A DNA stretch of 64,000 nucleotides from Blepharisma stoltei ATCC 30299 (GCA_965603825.1 CBFDEM010000050.1:310001-374000), one strand, 5' to 3'. Counted from the first letter of the stretch, positions 23,021 through 64,000 are shown. Program-made: numbers and translations. Notes: generated by a model not told the origin, from the letters alone.

Positions 23021-26000
23021 TTAAATATTAATGTCTAAAGAATCAAACTTGCTATTGTGGGAAATCGCAAATATGATCTTCTCTTTCATGATTTCTGGAG
23101 ATGTATAAGCTGGCAGCTCAAGTCTGAATATAGTATTGTCGATAATAGGAACCAATGTATTTACTGCTCCGGATTTACTGTGCTTGGCTATTGTAAATTT
23201 AAGAGGCCAATCCCACTCAGTAATCTTAGACCTTCTAGCAATATAGTCAATAAATTTGGCAAGCTCACTTTCTTTTAATGATTTAATTGCTTCCCAGAAG
23301 TTTTCAATGTGCGGATCTGTTCTTCTGCAATTTTCGTAAACGGTGTTTTCTTCTAAGACTTCTAATTTGACTTCTTGATTCAGGCATATGAGTTCACGTA
23401 GTTGAGCAGCTGTGAATAGGTTCAATTTATCAATAGGAACAACAGCAGCCACACCTTTCCTTATAGAATCGTAAGCTTTAGGATTTTCAAATAATTTGTG
23501 CTTCTCTAATAGATCAGCATAGTGGGCAGCATTTTCAAAAGTAACGTCAATATTGGCTCCGCCTTCACAAAGTTCCACAACTTCTTCTCCATATTTCACT
23601 ATGAACTTCTCAGAAATTTGCTGGCCAAAGTTGTCCGCAGTAATTCCATAGGCTTCAAGGTTCCTTAATTTATGCAAAAACTTGTAGAGTGGGAAATCAA
23701 AGTCTCTTAAATCTTCGGTTGTAACGTTTTCGTATAGAAGATGCTTAAATACAATAACAGGGAGTGAAAGTCTCAGCCTCAGCTTGGTACGGATTGCAGA
23801 ACCGAAGAATTTTCCAAGAGTGGTGAATAGGTGCATATGAGCTGGGAGAGTGGAGGTTGGATTTATCATCCAATTATCTCTTCCATTGCCTACGTTAAGG
23901 ACGTTATTTTGAGATGGGATCAAAAGTGGAAGTAATGGAGATTGAAGCTCTTTAGAAAGTTCTGTTAATAATTCATTATACTTGCCAGCATCATCTTGGA
24001 TTCCTTCTGGCTTGTATGCAAATTTGAACATTCTTTCAGGATGTCTAAGAGTTTTATTTGCTGCCGCTCCCAAGGCTCTGCTTATTTGACTAAACATTGA
24101 AGCAGTTGCAGAATGATCAACTTCCCCTTTAGCTTTTATTTCTTGTGCTTTAGCTTTATCGATAGTAATGTCAATTCTGCATTCAGTTTTAGTCCCATCA
24201 AGATGGTTTTCCAATCTTTCCTTCTTGAATCTTGATAACAAATAATACTTGGCCTTCTTAATAAATTTCATGAGAGAGTTTTCTGGCTCATCTGCTTCAG
24301 TGTGCAAATCAAACAGATAGAAGTAATTTTGGAATCTTGAGCAGAAGTTAAACAAAATTTCTTTCAAGTTAAATAGCTCTGCCTCTGATAATTTTTGTAA
24401 GTCTGGATAATAGATTAACTCTTCTGGAGAAATACACAATGCATTATTGCTCAGCATACTATCGAAACTAATTGAATTGGCGTCTAGGTAGCCATTCATG
24501 AATTCAATAAATTGCTGTGCTATGCCATCTTTGAAAAATTTGGAATAGGTAGGCTTATAGTTTTCTCTCCAATTTTCTCTGTCGCCAGCTGATGCAAAAC
24601 TCAAATAGGAATCAATGAGTTTAGTGTTTCTTCCTTTGAAATTAGGTGTTAAGGAGAATTGATAGCCCCATAATTCAGTTTCTTGTTCAGAGTCGATTTT
24701 CATGAGATCAACACCTGCAGGATATTTTCCTGAATTATTGATTGCTAAGCTTTGGTTTTCTTCTGATAAGACAGCAATGAATTTGAAACAATCTTCTGAG
24801 TCTTCGATATTAAGAGCCACTTGGACAGTGTCTAGCAATTTTTCATTCTTATAAAACGCGATTTCGTTTTTATCAAAATCGATATAGCTCCCAATGACGT
24901 CGTTTTGGTCATAGCTGGCACTGTCAGCAGTGCCAAGTTTTCCATTACTATAATAAATTACAGTTTGCTCACTTCCTTCAATAGTGTTCTCATTGATCAA
25001 GCTCTTCTTGGTAAAGCCAACGCCTACATATCCTTTGGATTCAACAGAGACTTCGATGTAGTATTTGCCGTTTCTCATTTCAGCTTCAGTTTCATGGTAA
25101 GTTTTATCACTTGTTGACTTTGTGACAGTCGTTTTATTCGCGTTGAGTGCAGCTCCGTTCTGATTGCTGTCCCATACATGCTTAATATTAGCAGTTTTAT
25201 GAACTGGGATCCAATAATAGACTGAGTCTCCTATAATATCCAAGTTTCTTTCAGAAAGAGGTTTGGACCCAGCCATTCTTTCAACACTGAGCACAGTAAT
25301 GACTTGATTTAAAGAGCCAAAGCAGATCACTGGGGTGACTGAAGAAGCAATCCCCGTGAACTTGAAGACCTCAAGAGCTCCATTAAAGAAAGTCAGTTCT
25401 CTTAAGTTCATATCAATAAACATTGTGATTTCATCTCCCTCCTTAAATCCTTCGAACCCACCTTTGAACCATCCTTTCTTGTGAACTTCTCCAGTTTTTT
25501 TCCAACTCCAGACATCATGAGGACAGTCGCATCCTATGTACTCATTTAGGTCATAGTTTTGGACATCCTTTGCAGTCCTATAAACTCCAATGTACCAATA
25601 ATCAGAGTCTCCATCAGATTCTATCTTGAATTTGATACTAACTGTACCGTCAGAGTAGTCTTCAGACCAAATTGCGTTGCCCCATCCACTTCCCTTGACT
25701 CTGGTAACTTGTGAATTTTCTTCTGAAAAAGTGACTTTGCTTCCACAAGGTTCTTCTCTCCATCTCGCTTCGCTGATTATAGCTTCAATTTTCTTTTCTT
25801 CAACTAATTTCTTACCAAATTCATCATAGCTGAAAACAGCTGTATCTCTTGGGTCAAGATTTGAATTTGAATCGAAGACGATACTAATAAAAGAAGCACC
25901 AGGAATTTGGATGAATTCTTTTGTGGTTTGTCTAATATAAGGATGTTTGGACTCATAAGTTCTTCCGAGATTACAAGTAACGTTCTTCTTGAATGATTCG

Positions 26001-29000
26001 AATAAGAAAGTTTCTAACAGTCCATCTTTTTCGCTTAGACCTTTAATATCAGAAACAAGCTCACAAAATTCCATAAACCAAAGCTCCTCTCCAGTAAGTT
26101 GGAATTTATGTGAAGCATCTTCTAAGAGCCTTGCAGTTGCTTGCATCAAACTATTTTCTGCTTTATTAGAGCTCACAACATTATGAAGCTCATTTGCTTG
26201 AGCAATCAAGATGTTAAGTATATTTTTGAACAATGGGCCTTTCTGATCTCTTATGATCTTATTCAAAATTCTTACAGAGTCAAGCTTCAATTCTAAATTG
26301 TTTGCTGAAAGAGAATGCAAGAAAATAGGCTGGACACACCTAGGGTGCGTTATTTCCATAAATTCTTTAGGTATTGGGTTCATGCTTGAAATCTTATTTA
26401 GCACCCACATAGCAGGCCAAGGATGTTCTGCGACTACAGAACTTGAGCCTTCAGGAATCACTTCAAACTTATATCCCCAATAGTTAACTGATCCATCAGA
26501 GTGGAAATATGTATAAACAACTTCTCCATCTACTTCAAATTGAGCCCAGTTTGTTTCTCCTTCTCCTGAAATGCATTTGATTTCATCAACTCTGCCTGGA
26601 TTCTTGTAGAATCTTAAAGGATCACAACCACTTTCAGTCTTACATTGTGGATCAAACACAAATTTGAGTTTTTTAGCTCCAGGAATTCTGATTTCTTGAT
26701 CTAAATCCATGTTATTATCATATGGGTGGGTTGGACTTTCAATTGTCAAAGAAGACAATGATGCTCCTGATTTTTCTGTATATATCAAACATCTAAGCAT
26801 CCTTTCTAGACAGTCCTTGAAAAGCTTGTCCTTGAATTTCGGATTGTCCTGGGATAGTAAAGTATCAATCTTTTTAGCAATTTTATTGATAGAGCTTCCT
26901 AAGAAATCGAATAATTTGGTGATACTGAATTCCAGAGCTATTGTTGCAATAGAGGTTGGGCATTTTTTGATGAGCATTAGAGCAAGATTTTTATATGAAA
27001 CTTGCTTTGAGGAATCCATAAACTTATAATAGTGACTGAAGAGCTCTTGAATAGACAGAGCATCAAAAGCGTCGTCTTTAACTTTTGTTTCGTTGTTTTC
27101 TGCAGTTTCTAGTAATCCGCATAGTGGCATTTTAGCTAAGATCATCTTCTTGAATGGTGTAAGCGCGCAGTTCAAAGCAGTATCACTTATCTTTGCAGCT
27201 AAAAATAAGACTGATTTCTTTCCTAAGTTATGGCCAAGATTTATCGCGTTGCCTTCCTCATCTTTAATTATCTTATAGCCAAATGGCACTTTTACGTTGT
27301 ACATTGAAGAAGATTTGATGAAAATGATATCTTTTATACAGGATTTTTCTATTTCTCCTTGCTTTACCCAGATGTGAGTTAAAGAGTCACTTGCTTGGTC
27401 TTCAGGGTCAAAGTTCCCTAAATCTATATGGTCTTTAGCTTCTGTGCCTAGAGCAATGCTTGAGTACCCACTTCCAGTAGTAACCTGCTCTTTTTTAGCA
27501 CATAAAATCATTCTCTTTGGAATATTGAACTCTTTCTGCTTGCCATCTTCATAGATAGGAACTGCTGTAAATCCATTAGGGACTTCACGAATTGTTTTAA
27601 CCAGTTTTAGCTCAGTGATAACATCTTGGTTTAGAGAGCTAATGGTATTTTGGAAAGCGTTCGGGAAATTCTGAGAAACGTAGTCTAAGCTAGACCTTAA
27701 GTCTCTGTCTGATGATAGTGCTTGAGTTATTTGGTCTTCAGTCAAGCCTAAAAGTTTTAGTCTTAGCCTATCATAGTTGTCAGATTTTTGAGTGACTTTG
27801 ATTGTTTTATAAGTCTCAGCTTCTTTGGATTTATTAACTTTTGTTGGTGTAGCCTTTGTATTTTTACCGTCATATACTTCGAAAGTTAACAATGAAGCTC
27901 TTGTGCCAGCTTCCATATAAAGTCCATAAGCTCCCATTTGAAGGCCATTAAATGTAGTTGTATCCTGGAGATCAATGGTTTCTTTGGTGTTTTCATTAAT
28001 TATTCTGATTTCTCCATTTGGATTTAAATAAACCCTAACAGCTAATACCTCACCAAGTTTGGCAGGACAGACAACACTGCCATTGACTTCAAAGCTTGGC
28101 GATCCAGAGCTTGTGCTAATTCCTATATCCACTCCTCCAAGCTTGAGACCATATGACAACTGATTTTGATAGTGAATACCTTCTAACTGCGCTAGAATAG
28201 TCAAAGACTCTACAAACTGTGTTGTGTTTCTGAATACAGACAAGTCAGGAACTGTCGTTATTTCTTTTCTTGATGTTGTGAAGTTACTATTTTCTATCAC
28301 GAATTGGCTACTTGAATTTTGGTAAATATCAGCATATCCAGCGATATCAGATGTTTCAAGTTCTATAGATTCAATTTGCTGAAGCTTGAATAATAGGGTT
28401 GATTTTGGCTCTTCTACTTTTCCAGCAAATTCTAAAATCCCATTTTTATCCTTGATTCCTTTGTCAAGACACTTAGCGATGATCATTGTCAGAATATTTT
28501 CTTTTGTCAGTTCTTCAATTAGGTATTTGGTTTTATCGCTAGCATTCGAAAACATTTCCATTATTTCTTCATCTGTAAAGTCGTCATAAATGTATTTTTC
28601 TGCGATTGTCTTTAGAATTTGTTTAATAAGCAGCTGCTTTTCTTTATTTCCTAAGACTCTAGTTTCAGCTTTAGCATGCTTCATGATAGATCTTAATAAG
28701 TCTGCCCCTTCTTCGTCGCTAATCTCTTTCTTTTTTAAGATAAGTGTAATTGCATTGACAATAACGTTTTCTAAGTGAGCATAAAGGGTTCTGAACGAAG
28801 CAGTTCTCTCAGATTTCATATTGAAACGCAAAAATTCTGATTCAATTAGAGCAAACCACAAATTGATAGCCGAGTCTTTAATGCTCTGCAGTTCATCTTG
28901 GCTAAGTATTTTCATGGCATTAAAGTTGTTGATCGTCCTTAAATAAGCAATGGACTCTGTATTAACTGACACTGTCTCATCAGTGACAGGAGAATAAATA

Positions 29001-32000
29001 TTTACTGTGTCCCCATCAATTGCTCTTATGATGCATCTTGTCATCTTAGAATTAATTAGTTTTGCTTCAGCCAACTCAATTGGATCATTTCCAAAAATAT
29101 CAACCTGCTTCGATAAAATTGCTAAAGCTTCGATTGCTCCAACTTGATACATAGGAAGTGCTTTTCCATCCCTTAAGTTTTGGCAAGCATCGTTCAAAGA
29201 TTTCATAATTGTGGTGAGTACCTCGCCTCTCCATCTTTCTATGTTCATGAGTTCTTTCAAAAGCACAAGTGCTTCATAGCCACATCTGAAAAGTTTGCTT
29301 TTTGCATCTCTGAAGCCATACCAATAAGTCATTTTCCCAATTCTTTTAAGCAAAAATTGGACAAAGTCAGTGCTTGTGCTTTCAGAGTTAAAGTGAGGAA
29401 GAGTAGTCCAGATTGCACCTAGTGTTTGGGGTGAGTGCTGAGATGGGAGAATTGCTTTGAGGATGCGAGACCCAAGGGCAAAGTTGCTTTCTGCGCTGCT
29501 CAGGAAAGTAATTTTAAGGAGCTCTGCAAGATATTCTTCACGAGCTAAGAGGCTCACTATTGTACTCGATCCGAGGCACCCATAAATTGTCCACAATAGA
29601 GAAGTCATATATTCACTTGCAGATTTTTTTTCTTTATATACTTCTAAACAGCTATTAGGAAGATCATCATACTGGAGAAGAGCCCACTTCAGCTCATGAT
29701 AATAATCGAAAAACTTGTTCTGGTCTTTGGCTATTGCATGCATTGCTACATACAAATCTAAATTGCCTTCTTCGTTTTTGAATTCTGCTGGGCAATCTTC
29801 TTGAACTTTGTCACTTTGCACGATGCCTTTTGTTTCTGTTAACTCGAAAAGATCAATTAATTGTTGGAAAGATTTTCCTTGATGTTTAGGATTGAACCTT
29901 GAAACAATATTTTTATATATGGTTTCAAGATTACAGAAATCATAAGATAAAGCTGCTTGCTCGAAATCTTCTGGTATTTGAGTCCAGATCTTAGAATGTT
30001 CAATATAATACTGATCTTCTTTAGAAAGTGTATTTTTAATAGCATAGACCGAGTTGATATATTTAAAGAAATCGAAATTTCCTTTAGAATTTTTGTAAGC
30101 ATCTTGGCTTGAAAGGAGTTCTGAGATCTCAGGATCAAGTTTCGAAATTTCAGCAGGAGTTAAAACTCCTTTCATTGCAGGATCAGCTTTGGCGATTAAA
30201 TCGTTAATCGTTTCCTTCAACATGGATTCTCCTAGTTTTTCAGTCTCTTTATTAAACTGCCTGACCCATTCTTGCATTGGATTCTTTTTAAAAGCTTTGA
30301 TAGCGTTCATTTTATTTACCCACAACTCCCCTGAAACTGCTACATTAAGTTTTAGACCTGAGTAGCCCAATTCCAATAGCGATTGATCCCACTTTAATTC
30401 ATTAAAAATTGAATTCAAAAACAGATCTTGGACAGTCTGTTTGACAACTGAATTACTTTGGCTTACATTTCCCACTGCACTAAATACTAAAAGCTTATAA
30501 GCAGCCCATGCTGTTCTGCATAATCTATCTTTAAGGCTTTCTCTTAATTGCTTTTCATCTTCTGATTCCTCACCTAATAGATCACAATAAGGCCTGTACT
30601 CACATTCAAGGTTCTCCTGGATACTGACCAGAAATTGGCTCTTTGCACTTGGTTCGCTCTTTTTGATGAAAATATGTTTGGATTCTCCATTCTGAGTGAA
30701 CTGGCCTAAATTTTCATATCCTTCAATTTCTTCAGATGTGACTTGGAAATCGACAACAGGAAGTGCTCCTTTATGCTCAATAATTAAATAGAGATTCTGG
30801 CCTTCTCCTTCTCTGGCTTCTAAGAGAATTTTATCAACATCGTCAGAGATATCAGCTTCTACCAAGATTTTGAATCCTGTAATGCACTGATCCAAAAGGA
30901 ATGATTTGGTCTCAACTTCTTCTCCTATATAGCCTTTAGACCAATTCAATAAAAGAGAAATGATAAGTGGGAATTGTTGTTCTACTATCATAAGATTATC
31001 AGACTCTTTTAATGGGAAGCATAATGCATCTAAAACAGTCAAGTAATGGGAGAAGAAAGGTCTTTCGATGGCTTCTGTTTTTGATTTGAGCAGCTCCCTC
31101 TGCAAGTATCCATAGATGTTATAAAATGACTTTTGGATGCACTTTAATAGGTTTGAATCAATTCCTTCAACACTATCCCAATAATGGAATTTTACATTGT
31201 TTTGCTTCAAAGAGTCAACAAAGGATCTTATTAGTGAAGTTTCTTTTCTAAATGATAAGCTCATTAAGTTTCCTAAGCTAGAAAGTCCAAGAGCTCTTGC
31301 CATAGCTTTCACTCTTCTTTTCTCAATGGTGTCTACAATTTTTTCAGCTGAAGCTGGAGTTTCGAGTAAAGAAAGAATAAGTTCAGATATTTTTTTGATT
31401 TCTTTAACGTCTTCTGAGTGGCTTTCGTCTTCACTTTCAGTCCTTCCTAGCATAGCAACTAAGCTTGAAGCTGCTGAAACTCCTCCTTTGACTTGCTTCC
31501 ATTTGCTTTCTTTTTTTTTCATTTTAGGAATGCTGGCTTCTCCGACTACAGTTGTTACCAAATGTTTCATTATTTTAGTAATCCCAAGCTCATTTAATCC
31601 TTGATTATGCTGCGAATTGATTAACAGAGCGCATTTAACTACAACATCTTTAGAAACTTCTTCAAAGGTCATGGATACAGTTTCTTTCGATTTTTGGATG
31701 TACTTATCAGCCCATTTTCTATATTTGACTGCATCTTTTACGAGGTATTTGACTGTAGATCCAACACTTGTAGGATCTTGAAGAAGGTTTTTGAAAGTCT
31801 CAGCAAATTCAAAGAAAGCTACATAAACAGCGAAAATGGCTCTTTCTGCTTTATCAAAATCTGGTCCTCCAATTGCTGAATCTTCTTCGCTAACTCCGCT
31901 CAAACTTTTCAGGGTATTCCAATCTCTTACAATTTCGCTATTCCCTTCAATGAAATCGTTGATAAACTGATTGTCAGAATACTTTGCATCTCCCCATTTT

Positions 32001-35000
32001 CCAAAAGAGTCAATATACTCTTGCAATGTCAGCTCTGATTTATTATTGCATACCAGCTTTTTAGTAGGATCGCTTCTAATAAACTGATTCAACATCTTAG
32101 GCTTAACTTTTTCTCCAATTCCTGGCACTTGGGTAAGGGTGATCAGACTTTCTGGGATAGGGTTTTGAGGTTTAACAAGTGACAAAGTCTTATCAGAAAT
32201 TCCGTATTTAAGCAGAGGGTTTTGAAGCAAAGCTTTCACTTTTTCATCTTCTGGTGTTGTCTCAAATTCTCCTGAAATCAATTTTACGCTGATAAACCCA
32301 ACCATAATCCCTGCTGCGTCTTTTGTGGTATCTGGCCATTGTTTAGCATAATAATCAGCCTGAATTTCTCCGAAAATATCAATTTTCCAGCCCCAATAGT
32401 TGACTGAACCATCAGAGTGGAATGTGAAGAACAAATATGGGGTATTTACTTCAACTCTTTCCCCATTCTTTGGAAAATCGTCTCCGTCCCATCTGAAGAG
32501 CTTTTCTTCTTTTTTATCATCTTTCCAAAGCTCTAAATAATCGCAATTCTTCTCGGTTTTGCATTGAGGGTCAAAGACCAAATAATATTTTCTTGCTCCA
32601 TTGATCTTTACAGTGTGGGTAATATCAAGACTGTTATCGTAATTGTGACTACTTTCATAAGCATCTCCTGCAGCTAGAGCCCAACCTTTATTTAAGATTT
32701 TTGGCTTTGGGTCAAAGTGTTGTAGAGATGTTGTGATGCTCTGCAAAACTGGCAAAATTTTTGCCAAGAAATCAAGGCTCATTCTGGTTAAAGACAACAT
32801 GTAAAGAAGAGTTTCTAATAAATCTGCAAGGATGGTTTTTCGTATAGTGTTTGTGAGTGCATCTGACAATGAAGACCCTTTTTCTTTTGCTTTCACAATA
32901 TGAAGGACTTCTTCACAGTTCTGGAAAACACTTAATGAGTAGTTCATTAAGATTTCTTGCCATTTTCCTTTGAAGTTAGATTTAGCAGCTTGACCGAATA
33001 AAGCAATTTGACTTGTTTCAAGAAGTTTCAAGATTCCAACAGATGTCTCTTCTCCCCTCACAAGCTTCTTGGAAATTTCTGAAGAAAGCTCAATCAAGTA
33101 CTTGAAATAAGTTTCAACTAAATGCTGAGACTCGTCATTAATAAGCTCTAAGGCTGGGAAAAGTTTGTCAGGTCGAGCCATTTCAAGGAAAATTCTATCT
33201 TCAAGCTCTTTAAAGATACCTGATATCTCAACTCCGTCCATTTGATCTTTAAGTCTATCTAATAAATAGGACAATTTCTCCTGCGGATCCTTATAAAAGA
33301 CAGAAAAGCATGATGTCACAATTTTGGTGGCTTCTTCACAAGCCTTGGACCCTGGCATGCTATTTATTAGATCCATAGTGTTTTTCATAATTCTTGTCCT
33401 TAGCTGTCTTTCTAAAGTTGCATTTGGGATCATGTCCGACCCAATTAAGTGAGATCTGGTGAGTTTTAGCACATAAACGAGCATTTCTGAATAAATTTCT
33501 TTCGATTCTCTTTCAACATTTTCTGAGTGAATTTTTTCAATGCAAGTCAAAGCCAGTTTTTCTAAAATTTCGACAGTTTCATTCTTGATGTCAAGGGAAA
33601 GCCCCATTCTTTTTTCAACATTCACCTTTTTCTCTTTATTTTCTAATTTTTCTATGATACCGTCATTTAAGGCATCAAATGATTTAAGAATATAGTGTGT
33701 GAGCTCAATAGGCTTCATTTGGAGATAGTCATCAGCCATTTCTCCAGTTGTGATAGCCCTTTCAATCACGTTTAAATCTTCAAGATTCACTTCTACTTTA
33801 AATTTTTTCAAATAATTATCAACTTTTATGCGAGCCATTGCAGGCATATCTTCGGGATTATAGACGATTTTGTGTTTGCTGATTCCTCCAAGACACATAA
33901 ATAGTTTCATACTTTCAGGAAGTTCTCGAATAGGTCCTTTGGGATCTTCTTTTCCGTTATGGAAGAAAAGAACTGAGCGCTCATCCATATCTAGCAGAAG
34001 TCCAACTTTTTCACCGACTTGATATTTTTCGAAGGCGTACAATTCATTTCCAGCTTTAAAGATACCTCCGGCAGGTTTATAAGAGAGAGCAAACGATTGC
34101 TCTTCAGGGGTCGTGTCAAGGTTTGGATAATTTCCATTACAAACTCCATAGTAAACATAGTCAGTTTGACCTTCAGTCCAAAGCATCTCAACATAGTGAA
34201 CCCCTTCTGTCCAAGCTTCTGCTGAAAGATTAGCTCCCCAGCCATCAGTGATTGTTCTGACTAATACATCTGGCTCGTCGCTTCTGATTTCTAAGCCTTT
34301 CCCTTTCTTTTCAGTCTCCCAAGCAAAAGAGCCACTTATTTTTAGCTTCGTAAGGTCCTTAAAGTTCGCTAGCATAGGGAAAATTTGTTTATAAATTGGA
34401 GAATGATCTTGACTTGGGTCAAAATTGGCAAATGTTAAAGCTAATGCTAAGGCTGTACACAAATTCCCTGTAGCGACATAAAGCCCAAAAAGAATTGAAT
34501 AGCAGGCATTTATGTCTTCTTCTTGGATATTTGGGAGCTCTCTTCTTAGCATTGAGTTGAAAAATGCAAGAACTGATGAAACTACTTGAGAGATCGAAGG
34601 GTCGTTATCATTAAGTGCCATTGGGCTTAAGTCAGAAACTATACTTGAAGCAGCTTCTATGATAATCTTATAAAGCTCAGGCTTATCAGAGCCTAAAACC
34701 TTAATTATCCCAAACAATGAAGACAGACCAAAAGATAACCCTGATTTGGCAATTGGGTTGAGGGTTTCTTTAGTTTTTGAAGCTCCTGGCTTTGATTTTC
34801 TTTTTTCACGCTCATCCATTCTAAGAAGAGCTTCATAAGTTTTGCTCAGGTATTGAAGTTTTTTTGTCATCTCAACTGAGCTTGAGTCTTCCCCTTTACG
34901 TAAGTCGATTTCATTCAGTAAACCTTGGACGACTTTTGTGTGCCTTTCTTTTATAAAGCTTTTGTCTTCCATGCTGCACAGCATTTGCTCTTCATTTATG

Positions 35001-35209
35001 TAGTTCAGGTCTTCAAGCTTGGCTGAGGCAGATGATGATGAGCCTGGGACCTGATAATTATTGAGGTCTCCTCGAGTTAATAGAGCGCTATGATTGAAAA
35101 ACAGTTTTTGGTCACCAAGAATGCTCAGATCTCCCTTGAGCTCTTTTTCTAGAGCTTCAGAAGTTAGACCTGACACACGAGTTGCTATGCTGGTGGCTGC
35201 GTTACCCAT
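23021..35209 (-). CDS. Giant SPRY/CUB-like/MABP-like/UBA-like/HECT-fold protein, copy 1 (intact, 4062 aa; catalytic Cys absent)
   Basis: Single ORF. MGNAAT start. SPRY motifs (VGLLLDMDERSVLFFHNG; ITMFIDMNLRELTFFNG; IGSYIDFDKNEIAFYKN); CUB-like ESxHPY...FHSDGSVNYWG repeats; UBA-like LKLLGLTEDQITQAL; HECT-like C-terminus (ELQSPLLPLLIP, LGKFFGSAIR, VELCEGGANIDVT, FWEAI, LELPAYTS). Confidence 0.9.
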   Translation of the reverse strand: MGNAATSIATRVSGLTSEALEKELKGDLSILGDQKLFFNHSALLTRGDLNNYQVPGSSSSASAKLEDLNYINEEQMLCSMEDKSFIKERHTKVVQGLLNEIDLRKGEDSSSVEMTKKLQYLSKTYEALLRMDEREKRKSKPGASKTKETLNPIAKSGLSFGLSSLFGIIKVLGSDKPELYKIIIEAASSIVSDLSPMALNDNDPSISQVVSSVLAFFNSMLRRELPNIQEEDINACYSILFGLYVATGNLCTALALALTFANFDPSQDHSPIYKQIFPMLANFKDLTKLKISGSFAWETEKKGKGLEIRSDEPDVLVRTITDGWGANLSAEAWTEGVHYVEMLWTEGQTDYVYYGVCNGNYPNLDTTPEEQSFALSYKPAGGIFKAGNELYAFEKYQVGEKVGLLLDMDERSVLFFHNGKEDPKGPIRELPESMKLFMCLGGISKHKIVYNPEDMPAMARIKVDNYLKKFKVEVNLEDLNVIERAITTGEMADDYLQMKPIELTHYILKSFDALNDGIIEKLENKEKKVNVEKRMGLSLDIKNETVEILEKLALTCIEKIHSENVERESKEIYSEMLVYVLKLTRSHLIGSDMIPNATLERQLRTRIMKNTMDLINSMPGSKACEEATKIVTSCFSVFYKDPQEKLSYLLDRLKDQMDGVEISGIFKELEDRIFLEMARPDKLFPALELINDESQHLVETYFKYLIELSSEISKKLVRGEETSVGILKLLETSQIALFGQAAKSNFKGKWQEILMNYSLSVFQNCEEVLHIVKAKEKGSSLSDALTNTIRKTILADLLETLLYMLSLTRMSLDFLAKILPVLQSITTSLQHFDPKPKILNKGWALAAGDAYESSHNYDNSLDITHTVKINGARKYYLVFDPQCKTEKNCDYLELWKDDKKEEKLFRWDGDDFPKNGERVEVNTPYLFFTFHSDGSVNYWGWKIDIFGEIQADYYAKQWPDTTKDAAGIMVGFISVKLISGEFETTPEDEKVKALLQNPLLKYGISDKTLSLVKPQNPIPESLITLTQVPGIGEKVKPKMLNQFIRSDPTKKLVCNNKSELTLQEYIDSFGKWGDAKYSDNQFINDFIEGNSEIVRDWNTLKSLSGVSEEDSAIGGPDFDKAERAIFAVYVAFFEFAETFKNLLQDPTSVGSTVKYLVKDAVKYRKWADKYIQKSKETVSMTFEEVSKDVVVKCALLINSQHNQGLNELGITKIMKHLVTTVVGEASIPKMKKKESKWKQVKGGVSAASSLVAMLGRTESEDESHSEDVKEIKKISELILSLLETPASAEKIVDTIEKRRVKAMARALGLSSLGNLMSLSFRKETSLIRSFVDSLKQNNVKFHYWDSVEGIDSNLLKCIQKSFYNIYGYLQRELLKSKTEAIERPFFSHYLTVLDALCFPLKESDNLMIVEQQFPLIISLLLNWSKGYIGEEVETKSFLLDQCITGFKILVEADISDDVDKILLEAREGEGQNLYLIIEHKGALPVVDFQVTSEEIEGYENLGQFTQNGESKHIFIKKSEPSAKSQFLVSIQENLECEYRPYCDLLGEESEDEKQLRESLKDRLCRTAWAAYKLLVFSAVGNVSQSNSVVKQTVQDLFLNSIFNELKWDQSLLELGYSGLKLNVAVSGELWVNKMNAIKAFKKNPMQEWVRQFNKETEKLGESMLKETINDLIAKADPAMKGVLTPAEISKLDPEISELLSSQDAYKNSKGNFDFFKYINSVYAIKNTLSKEDQYYIEHSKIWTQIPEDFEQAALSYDFCNLETIYKNIVSRFNPKHQGKSFQQLIDLFELTETKGIVQSDKVQEDCPAEFKNEEGNLDLYVAMHAIAKDQNKFFDYYHELKWALLQYDDLPNSCLEVYKEKKSASEYMTSLLWTIYGCLGSSTIVSLLAREEYLAELLKITFLSSAESNFALGSRILKAILPSQHSPQTLGAIWTTLPHFNSESTSTDFVQFLLKRIGKMTYWYGFRDAKSKLFRCGYEALVLLKELMNIERWRGEVLTTIMKSLNDACQNLRDGKALPMYQVGAIEALAILSKQVDIFGNDPIELAEAKLINSKMTRCIIRAIDGDTVNIYSPVTDETVSVNTESIAYLRTINNFNAMKILSQDELQSIKDSAINLWFALIESEFLRFNMKSERTASFRTLYAHLENVIVNAITLILKKKEISDEEGADLLRSIMKHAKAETRVLGNKEKQLLIKQILKTIAEKYIYDDFTDEEIMEMFSNASDKTKYLIEELTKENILTMIIAKCLDKGIKDKNGILEFAGKVEEPKSTLLFKLQQIESIELETSDIAGYADIYQNSSSQFVIENSNFTTSRKEITTVPDLSVFRNTTQFVESLTILAQLEGIHYQNQLSYGLKLGGVDIGISTSSGSPSFEVNGSVVCPAKLGEVLAVRVYLNPNGEIRIINENTKETIDLQDTTTFNGLQMGAYGLYMEAGTRASLLTFEVYDGKNTKATPTKVNKSKEAETYKTIKVTQKSDNYDRLRLKLLGLTEDQITQALSSDRDLRSSLDYVSQNFPNAFQNTISSLNQDVITELKLVKTIREVPNGFTAVPIYEDGKQKEFNIPKRMILCAKKEQVTTGSGYSSIALGTEAKDHIDLGNFDPEDQASDSLTHIWVKQGEIEKSCIKDIIFIKSSSMYNVKVPFGYKIIKDEEGNAINLGHNLGKKSVLFLAAKISDTALNCALTPFKKMILAKMPLCGLLETAENNETKVKDDAFDALSIQELFSHYYKFMDSSKQVSYKNLALMLIKKCPTSIATIALEFSITKLFDFLGSSINKIAKKIDTLLSQDNPKFKDKLFKDCLERMLRCLIYTEKSGASLSSLTIESPTHPYDNNMDLDQEIRIPGAKKLKFVFDPQCKTESGCDPLRFYKNPGRVDEIKCISGEGETNWAQFEVDGEVVYTYFHSDGSVNYWGYKFEVIPEGSSSVVAEHPWPAMWVLNKISSMNPIPKEFMEITHPRCVQPIFLHSLSANNLELKLDSVRILNKIIRDQKGPLFKNILNILIAQANELHNVVSSNKAENSLMQATARLLEDASHKFQLTGEELWFMEFCELVSDIKGLSEKDGLLETFLFESFKKNVTCNLGRTYESKHPYIRQTTKEFIQIPGASFISIVFDSNSNLDPRDTAVFSYDEFGKKLVEEKKIEAIISEARWREEPCGSKVTFSEENSQVTRVKGSGWGNAIWSEDYSDGTVSIKFKIESDGDSDYWYIGVYRTAKDVQNYDLNEYIGCDCPHDVWSWKKTGEVHKKGWFKGGFEGFKEGDEITMFIDMNLRELTFFNGALEVFKFTGIASSVTPVICFGSLNQVITVLSVERMAGSKPLSERNLDIIGDSVYYWIPVHKTANIKHVWDSNQNGAALNANKTTVTKSTSDKTYHETEAEMRNGKYYIEVSVESKGYVGVGFTKKSLINENTIEGSEQTVIYYSNGKLGTADSASYDQNDVIGSYIDFDKNEIAFYKNEKLLDTVQVALNIEDSEDCFKFIAVLSEENQSLAINNSGKYPAGVDLMKIDSEQETELWGYQFSLTPNFKGRNTKLIDSYLSFASAGDRENWRENYKPTYSKFFKDGIAQQFIEFMNGYLDANSISFDSMLSNNALCISPEELIYYPDLQKLSEAELFNLKEILFNFCSRFQNYFYLFDLHTEADEPENSLMKFIKKAKYYLLSRFKKERLENHLDGTKTECRIDITIDKAKAQEIKAKGEVDHSATASMFSQISRALGAAANKTLRHPERMFKFAYKPEGIQDDAGKYNELLTELSKELQSPLLPLLIPSQNNVLNVGNGRDNWMINPTSTLPAHMHLFTTLGKFFGSAIRTKLRLRLSLPVIVFKHLLYENVTTEDLRDFDFPLYKFLHKLRNLEAYGITADNFGQQISEKFIVKYGEEVVELCEGGANIDVTFENAAHYADLLEKHKLFENPKAYDSIRKGVAAVVPIDKLNLFTAAQLRELICLNQEVKLEVLEENTVYENCRRTDPHIENFWEAIKSLKESELAKFIDYIARRSKITEWDWPLKFTIAKHSKSGAVNTLVPIIDNTIFRLELPAYTSPEIMKEKIIFAISHNSKFDSLDINI

Positions 35210-55500: not shown

Positions 55501-55744
55501 TCTTCCATGCTGCACATCATTTGCTCTTCATTTATGCAGTTCAGGTCTTCAAGATTGGCTAAGGCAGATGATGATGAACTTGGGAGATGATAATTATTGA
55601 GGTCCTCTCGAGCAAATAGATAACTATAATCGAAAAAAGTTTTTGGTCACCAAGAATGCTCAGATCTCCCTTCAGCTCATTTTCTAGAGCTTCAGAAGTT
55701 AAACCTGATACACGAGTTGCTATGCTGGTGGCTGCGTTACCCAT
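43582..55744 (-). pseudogene. HECT-fold giant gene copy 3, full length but disrupted
   Basis: Colinear with copy 1 from MGNAATS to LDINI. 1-nt deletions in homopolymers at ~55633-55638 and ~47621-47624; in-frame TAG at 50769-50771. Other track breaks are TGA. Confidence 0.82.
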
Positions 55745-55834
55745 TAATTATTAGTGATGACTGAAAATGGTCTAAATATAGATGATAATAAATCTGTTAA
55801 ATGTTTTTAAAGTCTTTTAAGCAGAATATTTAAA

Positions 55835-55966
55835 TCTCCTTTCAGCTCTTTTTCTAGGGCTTCAGGAGATAGGTCTGATATACGGCTGCAAAGGTGATAG
55901 CTGCGTTACAATAAATTATTATCCTTAAGAGAAAAATGGATGATGTATGCATATAATAAAATCTGT
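55835..55966 (-). repeat. Decayed direct duplicate of the first ~26 codons and 5' flank of the giant gene
   Basis: atctcctttcagctctttttctagggcttcagg...gctgcgttac...aaaatgg...taataaaatctgt parallels 55664-55797; the ATG is lost. Confidence 0.75.
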
Positions 55967-56089
55967 TCTGATTTCCATAAAATTTTAAAAATGACAGAGT
56001 AAGTAAAAAGAATTCAAAATAATATAATATCTTGTAATTTTAATTCTTTAAATGCTCGCTAATACTGTATTTACTATAAAAATAAGATA

Positions 56090-56330
56090 ATATTATCCAT
56101 AGGCCATACTTCTGCATCTTATAAATGGATACACTATCTTTTGAGAATTTAATTCTGCAATCTGAATGATATTATCTTTTCTAATAAAAGTAAAATTAAC
56201 CAAATAAAGGATGACATCCAAATCCTTTAGAACAGAAAGTGGCTTAAATCTTGTAAAGCATTTAGGTTGCAGACTAATCCAATATTCATCCATCCAAATA
56301 TTAAAAGATCTGGAACTGATGGGATGTGCA
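56090..56330 (-). mobile_element. Possible third LINE remnant (RT C-terminal region)
   Basis: With frameshifts reads HIPSVPDL/xYLD...KIVYPFI/DAEVW, resembling KYLG...P..Y..E.W at about the same spacing (~60 codons) as in the 40249-40728 RT. Weak. Confidence 0.3.
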
Positions 56331-56519
56331 TTTTGTTCCTAAATAATTATAAAAATCCTTTTCTAAAAGCACTTAGATTGCATAATAAAAAAGAGAGGAA
56401 GGGGATGATTAAATGTTTTAAAAATATATACATTCCAAATAAAAAATATAAATTTAATATTATGCGTTAAAATATAATATATTTAATTAAACCTAATTTT
56501 AATTTGAATGCTGATTATC

Positions 56520-59500
56520 TTAAATATTAATGTCTAAATCATCAAACTTGTTATTGTGGACAATCGCATATATGATCTTCTCTTTCATGACTTCTAGAGA
56601 TGTATAAGCTGGCAGCTCAAGTCTGAATATAGTATTGTCGACAATAGGAACCAATGTATTCACTGCTCCGGATTTACTGTGCTTGGCTATTGTAAACTTA
56701 AGAGGCCAATCCCACTCATTAATCTTAGACCTTCGAGCAATATAATCAATAAATCTGGCACGCTCACTTTCTTTTAATGATTTAATTGCTCCCCAGAAGT
56801 TTTCAATGTGCGGGTCTGTTCTTCTGCAGTTCTCATAAACGGTGTTTTCTTCTAAGACTTCTAAATAAACTTCTTGATTCAGGCATATGAGTTCACGTAG
56901 TTGAGCAGCTGTGAATAGGTTCAATTTATCAATAGGAATAACAGCAGCCATACCTTTCCTTATAGAATCATAAGCTTTAGGATTTTCAAATAATTTGTGC
57001 TTCTCTAATAGATCAGCATAGTGGCCAACATTTTCAAAAGTAACGTCAATATTGGCTCCGTCTTCACAAAGTTCCACAACTTCTTCTCCTTATTTTACTA
57101 TAAACTTCTCAGAAATGTGCTGGCCGAAGTTTTCCGAAGTAATTCCACAGGCTTCAAGGTTCCTTAATTTATGCAAAAACTTGTAGAGTGGGAAATCAAA
57201 GTCTCTTAAATCTTCAGTTGTGACGTCTTCGTATAGAAGATGCTTAAATACAATAATAGGGAGCGAAAGTCTCAGCCTTTGCTTGGTACGGATTGCAGAA
57301 CCGAAGAATTTTCCAAGAGTATTGAATAGGTGCATATGAGCTGGGAGAGTGGAGGTTGGATTGATAATTCAATTATCTCTTCCATTGCCTACGTTAAGGA
57401 CGTTATTTTGAGATGGGATCAAAAGCGGAAGTATTGGAGATTGAAGCTCTTTAGAAAGTTCTATCAATAATTCATTATACTTACCTGCATCATCTTGGAT
57501 TCCTTCTGGCTTGTATGCAAATTTGAACATTCTTGCAGGATGTCTAAGAGTTTTATTTGCTGATGCTCCCAAGGCTCTGCTTATTTGACTAAATATTGAA
57601 GCAGTTGCAGAATGATCAGCATCGCCTTTAGCTTTTATTTCTTGTGCTTTAGCTTTATCGATAGTAATTACAACTTTACAGTCAGTTTTAGACTCATCAA
57701 GATGACTTTCCAGTTTTTCCCTCTTGAATCTTGACAATAAATAATACTTAGCCTTCTTAATAAACTTCATGAGAGAGTTTTCTGTCTCATCTGCTTCAGT
57801 GTGCAAATCGAACAGATAAAAGTAATTTTGGAATCTTGAGCAGAAGCTAAACAAAATTTCTTTCAAATTAAACAGTTTTGCTTTTGATAATTTTTGTAAG
57901 TCTGGATAATAGCTTAACTCTTCTGTAGAAATGCTTAATGAAGTGTTGTTCAGCATACTATCGAAGCTAATTGAATTGACATCCAGGTAGCCATCCATAA
58001 ATTCAATAAACTGCTGTGCTATTCCATCTTTGAAAAATTTTGAATAAGTAGGCTTGTAGTTTTCTCTCCAATTTCCTCTTTCGCTAGCTGATGCAAAGCT
58101 CAAATAAGAATCAATAAGTTTTGTGTTTCTTCCTTTGAAATTAGGTGTTAAAGTGAACTTATAGCCCCAAAATTTATTTTCTTGTTCAAAGTCAATTCTC
58201 ATAAGATCAACACCAGCAGGGTATTTTCCTGTATTACAGATTGATAAGTTTTGGTTTTCTTCTGATAAGACACCAATAAATTTGAAGCAGTCTTCAGAGT
58301 CTTCGATATTAAGAGCCACTTGGACAGTGTCTAACAATTTTTCATTCTTATAAAAGGCAATTTGGTTTTTATCAAAATCGATATAACTCCCAATAACGTC
58401 GTTTTGGTCATAGCTCTCGCTGTCAGCGTTATTAATTTTTCCATTATTATAATAAATTATAGTTTGCTCATTTTCTTCAATAGTATTCGCATTGATCAAG
58501 CTCTTCTTAGTAAAGCCAACGCCTACAGATCCTTTGGATTCAACAGAGACTTCGATGTAGTATTTGCCGTGTCTCATTTCAGCTTCAGTTCCATGGTAAG
58601 TTTTATCACTTGTTGACTTTGTGACAGTCATTTTATCCGCGTTGAGTGCAGCTCCATTCTGATTGCTTTCCCATGCGTGCTTAATATTACCAGTTTTATG
58701 AACTGGGAACCAAAAATAGACTGAGTCTCCGATAATATCCAAACTTCTTTCAGAAAGAGGTTTGGACCCAGCGACTCTTTCAACACTGAGCACAGTAATG
58801 ACTTGATTCAAAGCGCCAAAGCAGACCACTGGGGTGACTGAAGAAGCAATCCCTGTGAATTTGAAAACTTCGATAGTTCCATTAAAGAAAGTCAGCTCTC
58901 TTAAGTTCATATCAATAAACATTGTGACTTCATCTCCCTCCTTAAATCCTTCGAACCCATCTTTGGACCATCCATTCTTGTGAAATTCTCCAGTTCTTTT
59001 CCAACTCCATACATCATGATGACAGTCGCATCCTATGTACTCATCTAGGTCATAATCATAGACATCCTTTTCAGTCCTATAAACTCCAATGTACCAATGT
59101 TCAGAGCCTCCATCAGATGTTATCTTGAATCTGATACTAACTGTGCCGTCCGAGTAGTCTTCAGACCAAATTGCGTTGCTCCATCCAGTTCTTTTGAGTC
59201 TGGTAACTTGCGCACTTCCTTCTGAAAAAGTGACTTTCCTTCCACAAGGTTCTTTTCTCCATCTCGTGGTTGATGCTTCAATTTTATTTTCTTTGACTAA
59301 TTTCTTACCATATTCATCATAGCTGAAAATAACTGTGTCTCTTCGATCAAGACTTGAATTTGAATCGAAGACGATGTTAATAAAAGAAGCACCAGGAATT
59401 TGCATGAATTTTTTTGTGGTTTGTCTAGCATAAGGATGTTTGGACTCATAAGTGCTTCCGAGGTTGCAAGTAAGATTCTTCTTAAATGATTCGAATAAGA

Positions 59501-62500
59501 AAGTTTCTAACAAATCATCTTTTTCGCTTAGACCTTTAATATCAGAAACAAGTTCACAAAATTCCATAAATCAAGGCTCCTCTCCAGTAAGTTTGAATTT
59601 ATGTGAAGCATCTTCTAGTAACATTGCAGTAGCTTGCATCAAACTATTTTCTACTTTTTTAGAGCTCACAGCATTATGAAGCTCATTTGCTTGAGCAACC
59701 AAGATGCTAAGAATATTTTTGAACAATGGGCCTTTCTGATCTCTTATGATCTTATTCAAAATTCTTACAGAGTCAAGCTTCAATTCCAATGTGCTTGCTG
59801 ATAGAGAATGCAAGAAAATAGGCTGGACACATCTAGGGTGCGTTATTTCCATTAATTCTTTAGGCATTGGACTCATGCTTGAAATCTTATTTAGCACCCA
59901 CATTGCAGGCCAAGGATTTCATGTAATTGCAGAAGGTGGGTTTTCAGGGATCACATAAAACTTATATCCCCAATAGTTAGCTGATTCACTATTAGGGCGG
60001 AAAAATAAACAAACAACTTCTCCTTCTACTTCAAATGGAGCCCAGTTTGTTTCTCCTCCTCTTCCTGAAATGATTTTGATCGTATCATATTTGCCTGGAG
60101 TCTTATAGAATGTTAAACGGTCTTGATTAGGACAAGTCTCACATTGTGGATCAAACACAATACTGAGACTTTTAGCTCCAGGAATTCTGATTTCTTGATC
60201 TATATCCATGAAATTTTTATATGGGTGGCTTGGGCTTTCAACTGTTAATGGAGTCAATGATTCTTCTTGCTTTTCTCTATAGATCAGGCATCTAAGCATA
60301 CTTTCTAGGCAGTCCTTGAAAAGTTTGCCCTTGAATTTCGGATTGTCTTGGGACAGTAAATTATCAATCTTTTTAGAAATTTTATTTACAGAGCTTCCTA
60401 AGAAATCGAATAATTTAATGATGCTAAATTCTTCAGTTATTGTTGCAATAGAGGCTGGGCATTTTTTTATGAGCATTAGAGCAAGTTTTTTGTATGAGGC
60501 TTGCTTTGAGGAATCCATAAGCTCATAAAAGTGGCTGAAGAGCTCTTGAATAGAGAGAGCTTCGAAAAAGTCTTCTTTAACTTTTCTTTCAGTATTTTCT
60601 GCAGTTTCTAATAATCCGCATAGTGGCTTTCCAGATGAAATCATCTTCTTGAATGGTGTAAGCGCACAATTCAAAGCAGTATCACTTATCTTTACAGCTA
60701 AAAATAAGACTGATTTCTTCCCTAAGTTATGGCCAAGATTTATCGCATTGCCTTTGTCATCTTTAATTATATTATACCCAAATGGCACTTTTACGTTGTA
60801 CATTGAAGAAGATTTGATGAAAATGACATCTTTTATGCAGGATTTTTCTATATTTCCTTGCCTTGCCCAGATGTGAGTCAAAGAGTCACTGGCATAGTCT
60901 TCAGGGTCAAAGTTCCCTAAATCTTTATGGCCTTTAGCTTCTGTGCCTAGAGCAATGCTTGAACACCCATTTCCAGTCGTGAACTGCTCAGTTTTAGCGC
61001 ATAAAATCATTCTCCTTGGAATATTGAACTCTTTTTGTTTGCCATCTTCATAGATCGGAACTGCTCTAAATCCATAAGGAACTTCACGAATTGTTTTAAC
61101 TAGTTTTAACTCAGTTATGACTTCTTGATTTAGAGAGATAAGGATATTATGGAAAGCGTTCGGGAAATTCTGAGAAATGTAGTCTAAGCTAGACCTTAAG
61201 TCTCTATCTGATGATAGCGCTTGAGTTATTTGGTCTTCAGTCAAGCCTAAAAGTTTTAGTCTTAGTCTATCATAGTTTTCAGATGTTTGAATGACTTTAA
61301 TTGTCTTATAAGTCTCAGTATCTTTGAATTTATTAACTTTAGTTGGTGCAGTTTTGCTGTTTTTACCGTCATATACTTCAAAAGTTAACAATGAAGCTCT
61401 TGTGCCAGCTTCCATATAAAGTCCGTAAGCTCCCATTTGAAGACCGTTAAATGCAGTTGTATCCTGTAGATCAATGCTTTCTTTGGTGTTTTCATTAATT
61501 ATTCTAATTTCTCCATTTGGATTTAAATAAATCCTAACAGCTAATACTTCATCAAGTTTGGTAGGACAGACAACAGTACCATTGACTTCAAAGCTTGGCG
61601 ATCCAGAGTTTGTGCTAATTCCTATATCCACTCCTCCAAGTTTGAGACCATATGACAACTGATTTTGATAGTGAACGCCTTCTAACTGCGCTAGAATAGT
61701 CAAAGATTCTATAAACTTTGTAGTATTTCTGAATGCAGATGAATCAGGAATTGTGGTTATTTCTTTTCCTTCTGTTGGGAAATTGTTATTTTCTATCACG
61801 AATTGACCGTTTGAATTTTGGTAAATATCTGCGTATCCAACGATATCAGATGCTTCAAGATTTAAAGATTCAATTGGCTGAAGCTTGAATAATAAGCTTG
61901 ATTTTGGCTTTTCTATTTTTCCAGCAAATTCTAAAATTTCATTTTTATCCTTGATTCCTTTGTCAAGGCATTTAGCAATGATCATTGTCTTAATATTTTC
62001 TTTTGTCAGCTCTTCAATTAGGTGTTTAGTTTTATCGCTAGCATTCGTAAAAACTTCTATTATTTCTTCATCTGTAACGTCCTCATAAATGCATTTTTCT
62101 GCGATAGTCTTTATAATTTTTTTAATAAGCAACTTCTTTTCTTTATTTCCTAAGACCTTAGTTTCAGCTTTAGCATGCTTCATGATAGATCTCAACAAGT
62201 CTGCCCCTTCATTGTCGCTAATATCTTTATTTTTTAAGATAAGTGTATTTGTATTAACAATCACATTTTCTAAGTGAGTATAAAGGGTCCTGAATGAAGC
62301 AATTCTCTCAGATTTAATATTGAAGTTCAAAAATTCTCAGTCAATTAAAGCAAACCACAATTTGATGGCTGAGTCTTTAATGCTCTGCAGTTCATCTTGG
62401 CTAAGTATTTTCATGGCATTAAAGTTGCTAATCGTCCTTAAATAAGCAATTGACTCTACATTAACTGACACTGTCTCATCAGTAATAGGAGAATAAATCG

Positions 62501-64000
62501 CTACTGTGTCCCCATCAATTGCTCTTATGATGCATCTTGTCATCTTAGAGTTAATTAGTTTTGCTTCAGCCAGCTCAATTGGATCGTTTCCGAAAATATC
62601 AACCTGCTTCGATAAAATTGCTAAAGCTTCGATTGCTCCAACTTGATACATAGGAAGTGCTTTTCCGTCTTTTAAGTTTTGGCAAGCATCGTTTAAGGAT
62701 TCCATAATTGTGGTGAGCACCTCGTCTCTTCATTTTTCTACGTATATAAGTTCTTTCAAAAGCACAATTGCTTCATAGCCACATCTGAAAAGTTTGCTTT
62801 TTGTATCTCTGAAGCCATACCAGTAAGTCATTTTCCCAATTCTTATAAGCAAAAATTGGATAAAGTCGGTACTTGTGCTTTTAAAGTGAGGAAGCGCAGC
62901 CCAGATTGCACCTAGTGTTTGAGGTGAGTGCTGGGATGGAAGAATTGCTTTGAGAATGCGAGAGCTAAGGGCAAAGTTGCTTTCTGCGCTGCTCAGGTAA
63001 GTAATTTTAAGGAGCTCTGCAAGATATTCTTCACGAGCTAAGAGGCTCACTATTGTACTCGATCCGAAGCACCCATAAATTGTCCACAATAGAGAAGTCA
63101 TATATTCACTTGCAGATTTTCTTTCTTTATATACTTCTAAACAGCTATTAGGAAGATCATCATACTTGAGAAGAGCCCACTTTAGCTCATGATAATAATC
63201 GAAAAACTTGTTCTGGTCTTTAGCTATTGCATGCATTGCTACATACAAATCTAAATTGCCTTCTTCGTTTTTGAATTCTGATGGGCAATTTTCTTGAACT
63301 TTGTCACCCTGCACAATGCCTTTAATTTCTGCTAACTCGAAAAGATCAAAAAATTGTTGGAAAGATTTTCCTTGATGTTTTGGATTGAACCTTGAAACAA
63401 TATTTTTATATATGGTATCAATATTGCAAAAATCATAAGATATAGCTGCTTGCTCAAAATCTTCTGGTATTTCAGTCCAGATCTTGGAGTGGTCAATATA
63501 ATACTGATCTTCTTTAGAAAGTGTATCTTTCATAGCATGGACTGCGTTGATATATTTAAAGAAATCGAAATTTCCTTTAGAATTTTTGTAAGCATCTTGG
63601 CTTGAAAGGAGTTCTGAGCACTCAGGATCAAGTTTCGAAATTTCAGCAGGAGTTAAAACCCCTTTCATTGCAGGGTCAGCTTTGGCAACTAAATCGTTAA
63701 TCGTTTCCTTCAGCAAGGATTCTCCTAGATTTTTAGTCTCTTTATTAAACTGCCTCATCCACTCTTGCATTGGATTCTTTTTAAAAGCTTTGACAGTGTT
63801 CATTTTATTTACCCACAACTCCCCTGAAACTACTTCATTGAGTTTTAGACCTGAGTAGCCCACCTCCAATAGCGATTGATCTCACTTTAATTCATTAAAA
63901 ATTGAATTCAAAAATAAATCTTGGACAGTCTGTTTGACAACTGGATTGCTTTGGCTTACATCTCCAACTGCACTAAAGACTAAAAGCTTATAAGCAGCCC
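56520..64000 (-). pseudogene. HECT-fold giant gene copy 4 (5' part beyond window); premature TAA inside the HECT domain
   Basis: Colinear with copy 1 in a single frame. TGA at 63882, 62730, 62337, 59919, 59571 and 57369; TAT>TAA at 57090-57092 would remove ~190 C-terminal residues. Confidence 0.75.

What the first reader, a model, noticed from the sequence alone, without database searches (positions are those of the whole stretch)
23021..64000. Tandem array of giant receptor-like proteins with hypervariable ligand-binding loops: candidate recognition/defence locus
Four head-to-tail copies (stops at 23021, 37651, 43582, 56520) are near-identical over helical regions, but in-frame changes cluster in recognition modules. 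The CUB-like loop FHSDGSVNYWG, identical in two copy-1 domains, becomes FYSRYFSTWG and FQSAKSGSLWG (copy 3) and FRPNSESANYWG (copy 4). KTESGCDPL becomes KTKNYGEPL or ETCPNQDRL, and SPRY1 loops are also rewritten. In CUB and SPRY families these loops bind ligand. A conserved parent, diversified then decayed duplicates, and TE-rich spacers resemble birth-and-death evolution at immune loci. Any defence role is inference only.
Basis: partly seen in the sequence, partly recalled or inferred. Interest (0 to 1): 0.85.

Follow-up and report, generated by a model that had tools for sequence, protein, structure and literature searches.

The report
Dead ubiquitin ligases with diversifying loops
In the ciliate Blepharisma, a huge, apparently catalytically dead ubiquitin-ligase gene has been copied several times, and the copies rewrote their protein-binding loops faster than neutral drift allows, as animal antiviral recognition proteins do, although no target or defence role is known.

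Summary
The window is Blepharisma stoltei macronuclear DNA (UGA = Trp). The genes are not surface receptors. They encode about 4060-aa, probably cytosolic, class I HECT-family proteins (MG start, 3 SPRY, 2 whole + 1 split CUB, C-terminal HECT, no TM segment). The catalytic Cys is lost in all eight recent copies and in a relative's ortholog, while older paralogs keep it.

The quoted loops are real. Copy 1 is intact and conserved; copies 2-4 are broken; two more intact copies lie outside the window. In the duplicates dN/dS is about 0.35 over most of the protein but 1.7-2.0 on 12 structure-defined binding-end loops of CUB1, CUB2 and SPRY1 (0.07 in copy 1 and its ortholog). The synonymous rate there is not raised, and the excess survives a multinucleotide model and a simulation of post-hoc loop picking (p<=0.003). 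Gene-wide tests are weak, and the signal is mostly in now-broken copies 3 and 4.

Best reading: pseudo-ligase adaptors or decoys under episodic diversifying selection with birth-and-death turnover. Defence is untested. Copies are 81-89% identical over helices, not near-identical; one of three spacers holds a clear retrotransposon, one a weak relic. Other scan notes had flagged the missing Cys.

The parts
23021..35209 (-). Copy 1 (c1): intact 4062-aa CUB/SPRY/HECT pseudo-ligase, conserved parent
   Evidence: single ORF; P0001; omega 0.24 outside hot domains; 97-100% of sampled words in four RNA-like runs
33854..34339 (-). c1 SPRY1 (res 291-452); binding-face loops diversified in duplicates
   Evidence: AF2 pLDDT 93; Foldseek TRIM67/HERC1/SPSB2 SPRY
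32360..32677 (-). c1 CUB1 (res 845-950) with ancestral loops KTEKNCDYL and FHSDGSVNYWG
   Evidence: Pfam CUB; family HMM
26444..26758 (-). c1 CUB2 (res 2818-2922) with acidic residues E2859, D2863, D2905 invariant in 24 distant homologs
   Evidence: AF2 pLDDT 93; Foldseek C1s/neuropilin/MASP CUB; conservation
24635..25969 (-). c1 split third CUB-like domain enclosing SPRY2 and SPRY3; not hypervariable
   Evidence: N-terminal CUB part E 3e-7, C-terminal part only E 0.08; omega 0.29-0.46
23024..24169 (-). c1 HECT domain; the catalytic Cys column is T4026 (window 23132-23134)
   Evidence: Pfam HECT 1e-45; ungapped alignment to active paralog P0017
35213..37600 (.). AT-rich spacer with a weak reverse-transcriptase-like relic at about 37161-37436 (+)
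   Evidence: 29% identity over 34 aa to the neighbouring LINE, pairwise E 9e-4; no relevant Pfam hit
37651..39843 (-). Copy 2: 3' fragment (SPRY3 to HECT), TAG at 39799-39801, ending 5' at the retrotransposon
39860..43000 (-). Decayed APE-RT non-LTR retrotransposon
   Evidence: RVT_1 8e-10 and 4e-8, Exo_endo_phos_2 9e-9; 64-73% identical relatives elsewhere in the genome
43582..55744 (-). Copy 3: full-length pseudogene (1-nt deletions near 55637 and 47626, TAG at 50769-50771) with the most rewritten loops
   Evidence: loop omega 3.4
55745..56520 (.). Duplicated upstream region of the gene unit, not a TE
   Evidence: 78-79% identical to DNA upstream of c4 and c6
56520..64000 (-). Copy 4 (continues to G000:C50:378717): full length, one recent TAA at 57090-57092 inside HECT; CUB2 at 59943-60260
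   Evidence: stop spanned by a mismatch-free contig piece of an RNA-like run; omega 0.24 after the stop

Best explanation
A Blepharisma-lineage pseudo-ligase, derived from a widespread family of giant class I HECT E3s, was duplicated repeatedly, and the duplicates evolved new binding surfaces under episodic positive selection, then mostly decayed. Shown: HECT/CUB/SPRY folds; Cys loss in all copies and the ortholog; purifying selection on the scaffold and dead HECT; omega above 1 on binding-end loops. Inferred: the protein is myristoylated and sits on a cytosolic membrane face; CUB and SPRY loops grip partner proteins (in active paralogs, substrates); lacking the Cys, it works as an adaptor, decoy or sequestering scaffold, possibly beside an active paralog; each duplicate was selected for a changed target and was lost when that target stopped mattering. 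The target is unknown; an intracellular antagonist is the usual cause of this pattern but is only one candidate.
For: Domains. Cys lost (T/A/V/F) in 8 copies plus ortholog, kept in 37 other long hits. The 12 binding-end loops (110 codons): omega 2.05 plain (LRT 48.8), 1.74 with multinucleotide changes (LRT 25.8), 1.31 with the synonymous clock inflated by a third (LRT 6.5), against 0.07 in c1 and its ortholog; 4-fold divergence 0.114 there vs 0.121 gene-wide. 11 of 12 such loops exceed 1, vs 3 of 14 other loops (Fisher p 5e-4). Neutral-loop simulation with post-hoc picking p<=0.003. Intact c8 has 31% of loop sites changed vs 11% elsewhere. Outside these domains omega is 0.33-0.40, so the duplicates were functional for most of their history.
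Against: Gene-wide M1a vs M2a not significant (p 0.34). The gene-wide branch-site signal vanishes once multinucleotide changes are allowed. Intact c6 has loop omega of only about 0.7; the excess comes from c3, c4 and internal branches. Five sequences only, some mosaicism near codons 1750-2250, home-made codon models. No ligand, localisation or induction data.
Confidence: 0.6

Rival explanations
1. Loss of, or escape from, the ancestral partner: duplicates stopped binding the parent's ligand, so the binding loops drift neutrally, or were briefly selected to lose binding to avoid interfering with c1, while the scaffold stayed constrained.
For: The conserved CUB acidic residues are among those destroyed (E2859 to C/K/T; D2905 to N/A/E). 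Domain-average omega is near 1. c6 loops about 0.7. The strongest signal is in copies now broken.
Against: Pure drift caps omega at 1, and the pooled loops exceed it after corrections. Runs of 3-4 successive replaced codons are more than loss of binding needs. Intact c8 is also heavily changed.
Confidence: 0.25
2. A local mutational process (multi-base replacement tracts, short templated conversion, or scars of imprecise IES excision) rewrote loops that tolerate change, mimicking selection.
For: Several loops show runs of 2-3-base codon changes and one-codon indels. Multinucleotide terms remove the gene-wide signal. c7 carries a TA-bounded 167-nt insert.
Against: 4-fold sites in the loops are not more diverged. 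No donor closer than 80% to c4 CUB2 exists in this assembly. Opposite-end loops, equally tolerant in principle, have omega 0.4-0.7.
Confidence: 0.1
3. They are surface receptors with extracellular CUB domains (the literal 'receptor-like' reading).
For: Solved CUB folds most like CUB2 are extracellular proteins.
Against: No hydrophobic window above 1.8 in c1; family-wide MG start; C-terminal HECT.
Confidence: 0.03

Closest known systems
Class I HECT E3 ligases (HERC1/2, HECTD3, KIAA0614, HECTHe1; PMC3673628)
   Same: C-terminal HECT whose active paralog P0017 is closest to HECTD3 among solved structures (E 6e-46); SPRY domains, reported as exclusive to class I; same architecture in Stentor SteCoe_9826 and older B. 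stoltei paralogs.
   Different: Catalytic Cys lost; long stem branch (1.9 changes per column in the C-terminal region); recent duplication with diversified loops. That survey describes no such pseudo-ligase in the passages read.
TRIM5alpha and fish finTRIM SPRY/B30.2 proteins (titles cited in PMC10445537; details from my own knowledge)
   Same: Cytosolic ubiquitin-system proteins, duplicated in clusters, with positive selection on SPRY loops.
   Different: RING/B-box/coiled-coil active ligases with known or suspected viral targets; here a HECT scaffold, no catalytic Cys, CUB loops also involved, no known target.
Ca2+-binding CUB domains (PCPE-1, C1s, MASP; PMC6372009)
   Same: Same fold (TM about 0.8); conserved Glu/Asp/Asp in loops at one end, which in PCPE-1 bind Ca2+ and a ligand Lys.
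   Different: Those are extracellular. Equivalence of the acidic residues here is inferred from motif and topology, not from superposed coordinates.
Tetrahymena young LRR gene families (PMC6564038)
   Same: Rapidly turning-over ciliate gene families physically close to LINE-like elements.
   Different: Thousands of 90-bp-exon genes made by exon shuffling; here eight intronless 12-kb copies diversified by codon change.

Membership tests
HECT domain family (class I-like) | C-terminal HECT domain above Pfam cut-off | tested here: met
   PF00632 157 bits vs cut-off 23.9
HECT domain family (class I-like) | SPRY domain and nearest solved HECT in class I | tested here: met
   SPRY hits; paralog P0017 best hit HECTD3
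HECT domain family (class I-like) | Placement in a named family (KIAA0614, HECTHe1) by a tree with reference sequences | not tested
   no reference set on hand; the tree used database hits only
Active HECT E3 ligase | Catalytic Cys in the HTCF motif | tested here: not met
   column reads T/A/V/F in all copies; last Cys of c1 is residue 3961
Active HECT E3 ligase | Ubiquitin thioester formation | not testable with these tools
   needs an assay
CUB domain | CUB beta-sandwich fold | tested here: met
   CUB2 model pLDDT 93, Foldseek to C1s, neuropilin, Kremen, prob 1.0
CUB domain | Ca2+ and Lys binding by the acidic residues | tested here: inconclusive
   E2859, D2863, D2905 invariant in 24 homologs; binding untested
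Surface receptor | Signal peptide or transmembrane segment | tested here: not met
   no Kyte-Doolittle 19-residue window above 1.8 in c1; MG start
Arms-race immune locus (TRIM5-like) | omega above 1 on ligand-binding loops | tested here: met
   weak gene-wide
Arms-race immune locus (TRIM5-like) | Birth-and-death turnover | tested here: met
   3 intact and 5 broken or partial copies
Arms-race immune locus (TRIM5-like) | Recognition of, or induction by, a parasite | not testable with these tools
   no infection data
APE-type non-LTR retrotransposon | APE endonuclease upstream of RT | tested here: met
   such elements are already reported in this genome (PMC9942806, PMC9942856)

The most novel reading that the evidence does not exclude
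These are cell-autonomous immune sensors or decoys of a ciliate: catalytically dead giant HECT proteins whose CUB and SPRY loops track effectors or surfaces of intracellular parasites and hand them to, or shield, active paralog ligases, a protist counterpart of TRIM5-type arms races.
Probability: 0.22. Interest if true: 0.85.

Novelty: new variant of a known kind. Interest (0 to 1): 0.55.

Why it matters
How ciliates recognise intracellular parasites is poorly known (my own knowledge), and my paper searches found no report of HECT pseudo-ligases or of selection on such genes in ciliates. This locus offers a small, testable set: three 105-165 aa domains in ancestral and derived forms, with active paralogs as controls. 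Without any immune role, it still shows residues invariant across distant homologs becoming the fastest-changing sites after duplication, which marks the binding surface of an uncharacterised giant E3 family.

Tried and rejected
Assembly or allelic artefact: rejected; copies differ by about 9% nt with dS near 0.2, and the strain is virtually homozygous (PMC9942806). Tiny introns explaining the breaks: rejected; the breaks are 1-nt deletions or point stops relative to intronless c1. Whole-gene neutral decay: rejected; omega 0.33-0.40 outside hot domains. Gene-wide site test: not significant. Sequence search of CUB2 against PDB found nothing; the fold search did. Several Nelder-Mead fits failed to converge and were redone; only values are used for loop sets. 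The first tree used a wrong frame for L012 and was fixed. Paper searches for HECT+ciliate+SPRY, HECT pseudoenzyme, and ciliate immune positive selection found nothing relevant.

Full report
Source and code. The genome has 41,464,486 bases in 64 contigs, and close database hits are named Blepharisma stoltei. This fits the published macronuclear assembly (64 contigs, UGA = Trp, virtually homozygous strain; PMC9942806). The window is G000:C50:310001-374000. Neighbouring genes such as the Tra1/TRRAP gene open up only when TGA is read as Trp.

The gene. Copy 1 is one intronless ORF of 4062 aa at 23021-35209 on the minus strand. Pfam finds HECT (3751-4057, E 1e-45), three SPRY stretches and CUB. A family HMM finds two whole CUB domains and a split third one around SPRY2 and SPRY3 (its C-terminal part is weak). 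AlphaFold models of CUB2 and SPRY1 (pLDDT 93) match solved CUB and SPRY domains. There is no transmembrane segment, and nearly all homologs start MG-x-x-x-S/T-like, which by established knowledge suggests N-myristoylation. So the protein is probably cytosolic and not a surface receptor. The active paralog's HECT is closest to HECTD3, and SPRY-HECT is reported as class I (PMC3673628).

Pseudo-ligase. Aligned without gaps to paralog P0017, PISHTCFF corresponds to PIIDNTIF. The catalytic Cys column holds T in c1, c4 and c8, A in c6 and c2, V in c3, c5 and the ortholog, F in c7. Thirty-seven other long hits, including Stentor SteCoe_9826 and two older B. stoltei paralogs, keep HTCF. The loss therefore predates the duplications, and the dead HECT is still under purifying selection (omega 0.15-0.36).

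Copies. Eight recent copies exist: c1 intact; c2 a 3' fragment abutting a retrotransposon; c3 full length with two frameshifts and a TAG; c4 full length with one TAA in HECT; c5 and c7 fragments further along C50; c6 intact on C50; c8 intact on C60 (P0003, matched by length and identity). About seven older paralogs at 38-43% identity lie on other contigs. The usual tree is (ortholog, c1, (c6, (c4, c3))), with some mosaicism near codons 1750-2250. c1 has a short branch and the ancestral loops. Four runs guessed to be RNA hold 97-100% of sampled c1 words. On 52701-58600 they show short copy-specific pieces of c3 and c4, none in the intergenic stretch, and one mismatch-free piece across the c4 stop. 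This is consistent with c1 being well transcribed and c3/c4 weakly, but contigs cannot give levels. The c4 stop looks recent, since omega after it is still 0.24.

Observation check. All quoted motifs are at the stated copies. Pairwise dS is about 0.2 and fairly even, while dN is 0.17-0.23 in SPRY1, CUB1 and CUB2 against about 0.06 in most other regions. Among distant homologs CUB2 is among the best conserved parts (c1 vs distant 65% against about 35% overall), and E2859, D2863 and D2905 are invariant in 24 of them. In PCPE-1, acidic residues of the CUB loops bind Ca2+ and a ligand lysine (PMC6372009); equivalence here is inferred. These positions are replaced in c3, c4 and intact c8.

Selection tests. 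I wrote codon models for table 4 on five sequences. Gene-wide M2a vs M1a is not significant (p 0.34). Branch-site tests are significant on duplicate branches and null on c1 and the ortholog, but the gene-wide signal vanishes when multinucleotide changes are allowed; CUB2 alone stays nominally significant (omega2 2.3, p 0.002). I then defined loops from predicted secondary structure: alternate loops at one end of each CUB sandwich, and the SPRY loops matching the SPSB pocket (that mapping is from my own knowledge, and I had already seen the alignment). On these 12 loops omega in duplicates is 2.05, 1.74 with multinucleotide changes, and 1.31 under a deliberately inflated clock, against 0.07 in c1 and the ortholog; CUB strands give 0.6-0.7 and opposite-end CUB loops 0.4-0.5; 4-fold sites are not elevated. 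Eleven of 12 loops exceed 1, versus 3 of 14 others. Simulating all 26 loops as neutral and picking the best 4 or 8 afterwards never reached the observed statistic in 300 runs. Per branch the values are c3 3.4, c4 1.7, internal 1.9, c6 0.7. At protein level loop sites changed in 48% (c3), 31% (c8), 28% (c4) and 16% (c6), versus 8-11% elsewhere.

Spacers. 39860-43000 is a decayed APE-RT non-LTR retrotransposon, a class already described in this genome (PMC9942806, PMC9942856). 35213-37600 has only a weak RT-like relic. 55745-56520 is the duplicated upstream region.

Mechanism. Most likely (0.6) the parent is a membrane-tethered scaffold that binds partners through CUB and SPRY loops and, without a catalytic Cys, acts as adaptor or decoy; duplicates were selected for altered binding, then most decayed. 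Rivals are loss of or escape from the ancestral partner (0.25), a local mutational process (0.1) and a surface receptor (0.03). The pattern resembles TRIM5-type loci, but no parasite, ligand or induction was tested, so membership of an immune class is not claimed.

Verdict. A real feature, correctly seen but misnamed: a new variant of giant class I HECT proteins, combining catalytic loss with loop-focused diversifying selection and gene turnover. Interest 0.55; the immune-sensor reading has probability about 0.22 and would merit 0.85.

Noticed in passing
L008 (G000:C50:450239-450405): Copy 7 carries a 167-nt insert that starts with TA and is followed by TA, like a retained IES or small mobile element in the MAC assembly.
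   Followed up: partly
L003:4283-5143 (G000:C50:398283-399143): Integrase-core-like fragment (rve E 0.026, weak) between copies 5 and 6, at the point where copy 5 is truncated.
   Followed up: partly
window 31400-31600 (c1 residues 1206-1265): A helical segment outside CUB/SPRY also evolves fast in duplicates (omega about 0.8), as do HECT residues 3720-3745 in c3 (3.2); possible further binding surfaces.
   Followed up: partly
window 5033-15028 (-): 3331-aa Tra1/TRRAP-like gene with six in-frame TGA (Trp) codons.
   Followed up: partly
window 23021-35209: c1 uses no TGA among 49 Trp codons, and its ortholog L012 none among 43 in the called ORF, whereas duplicates have 6-8 TGA each; fits stronger codon constraint on the parent.
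   Followed up: no
window 1650-3242 (+) and 3921-4958 (+): NEK-like kinase and casein kinase 1-like genes; ordinary.
   Followed up: no
window 18507-22790 (-): Large multi-membrane-spanning ORF pair with a PAS-like stretch directly downstream of copy 1; not analysed.
   Followed up: no
L006-L010 (G000:C50:432896-467324): Three large ORFs with similar signal-peptide-like starts (1093-2266 aa) flank copy 7, suggesting a second local paralog cluster.
   Followed up: no
window 27100-27770 (c1 residues 2480-2700): UBA-like stretch (by eye) followed by weak MABP/beta-prism hits (Pfam E 0.004-0.008), consistent with membrane association.
   Followed up: partly
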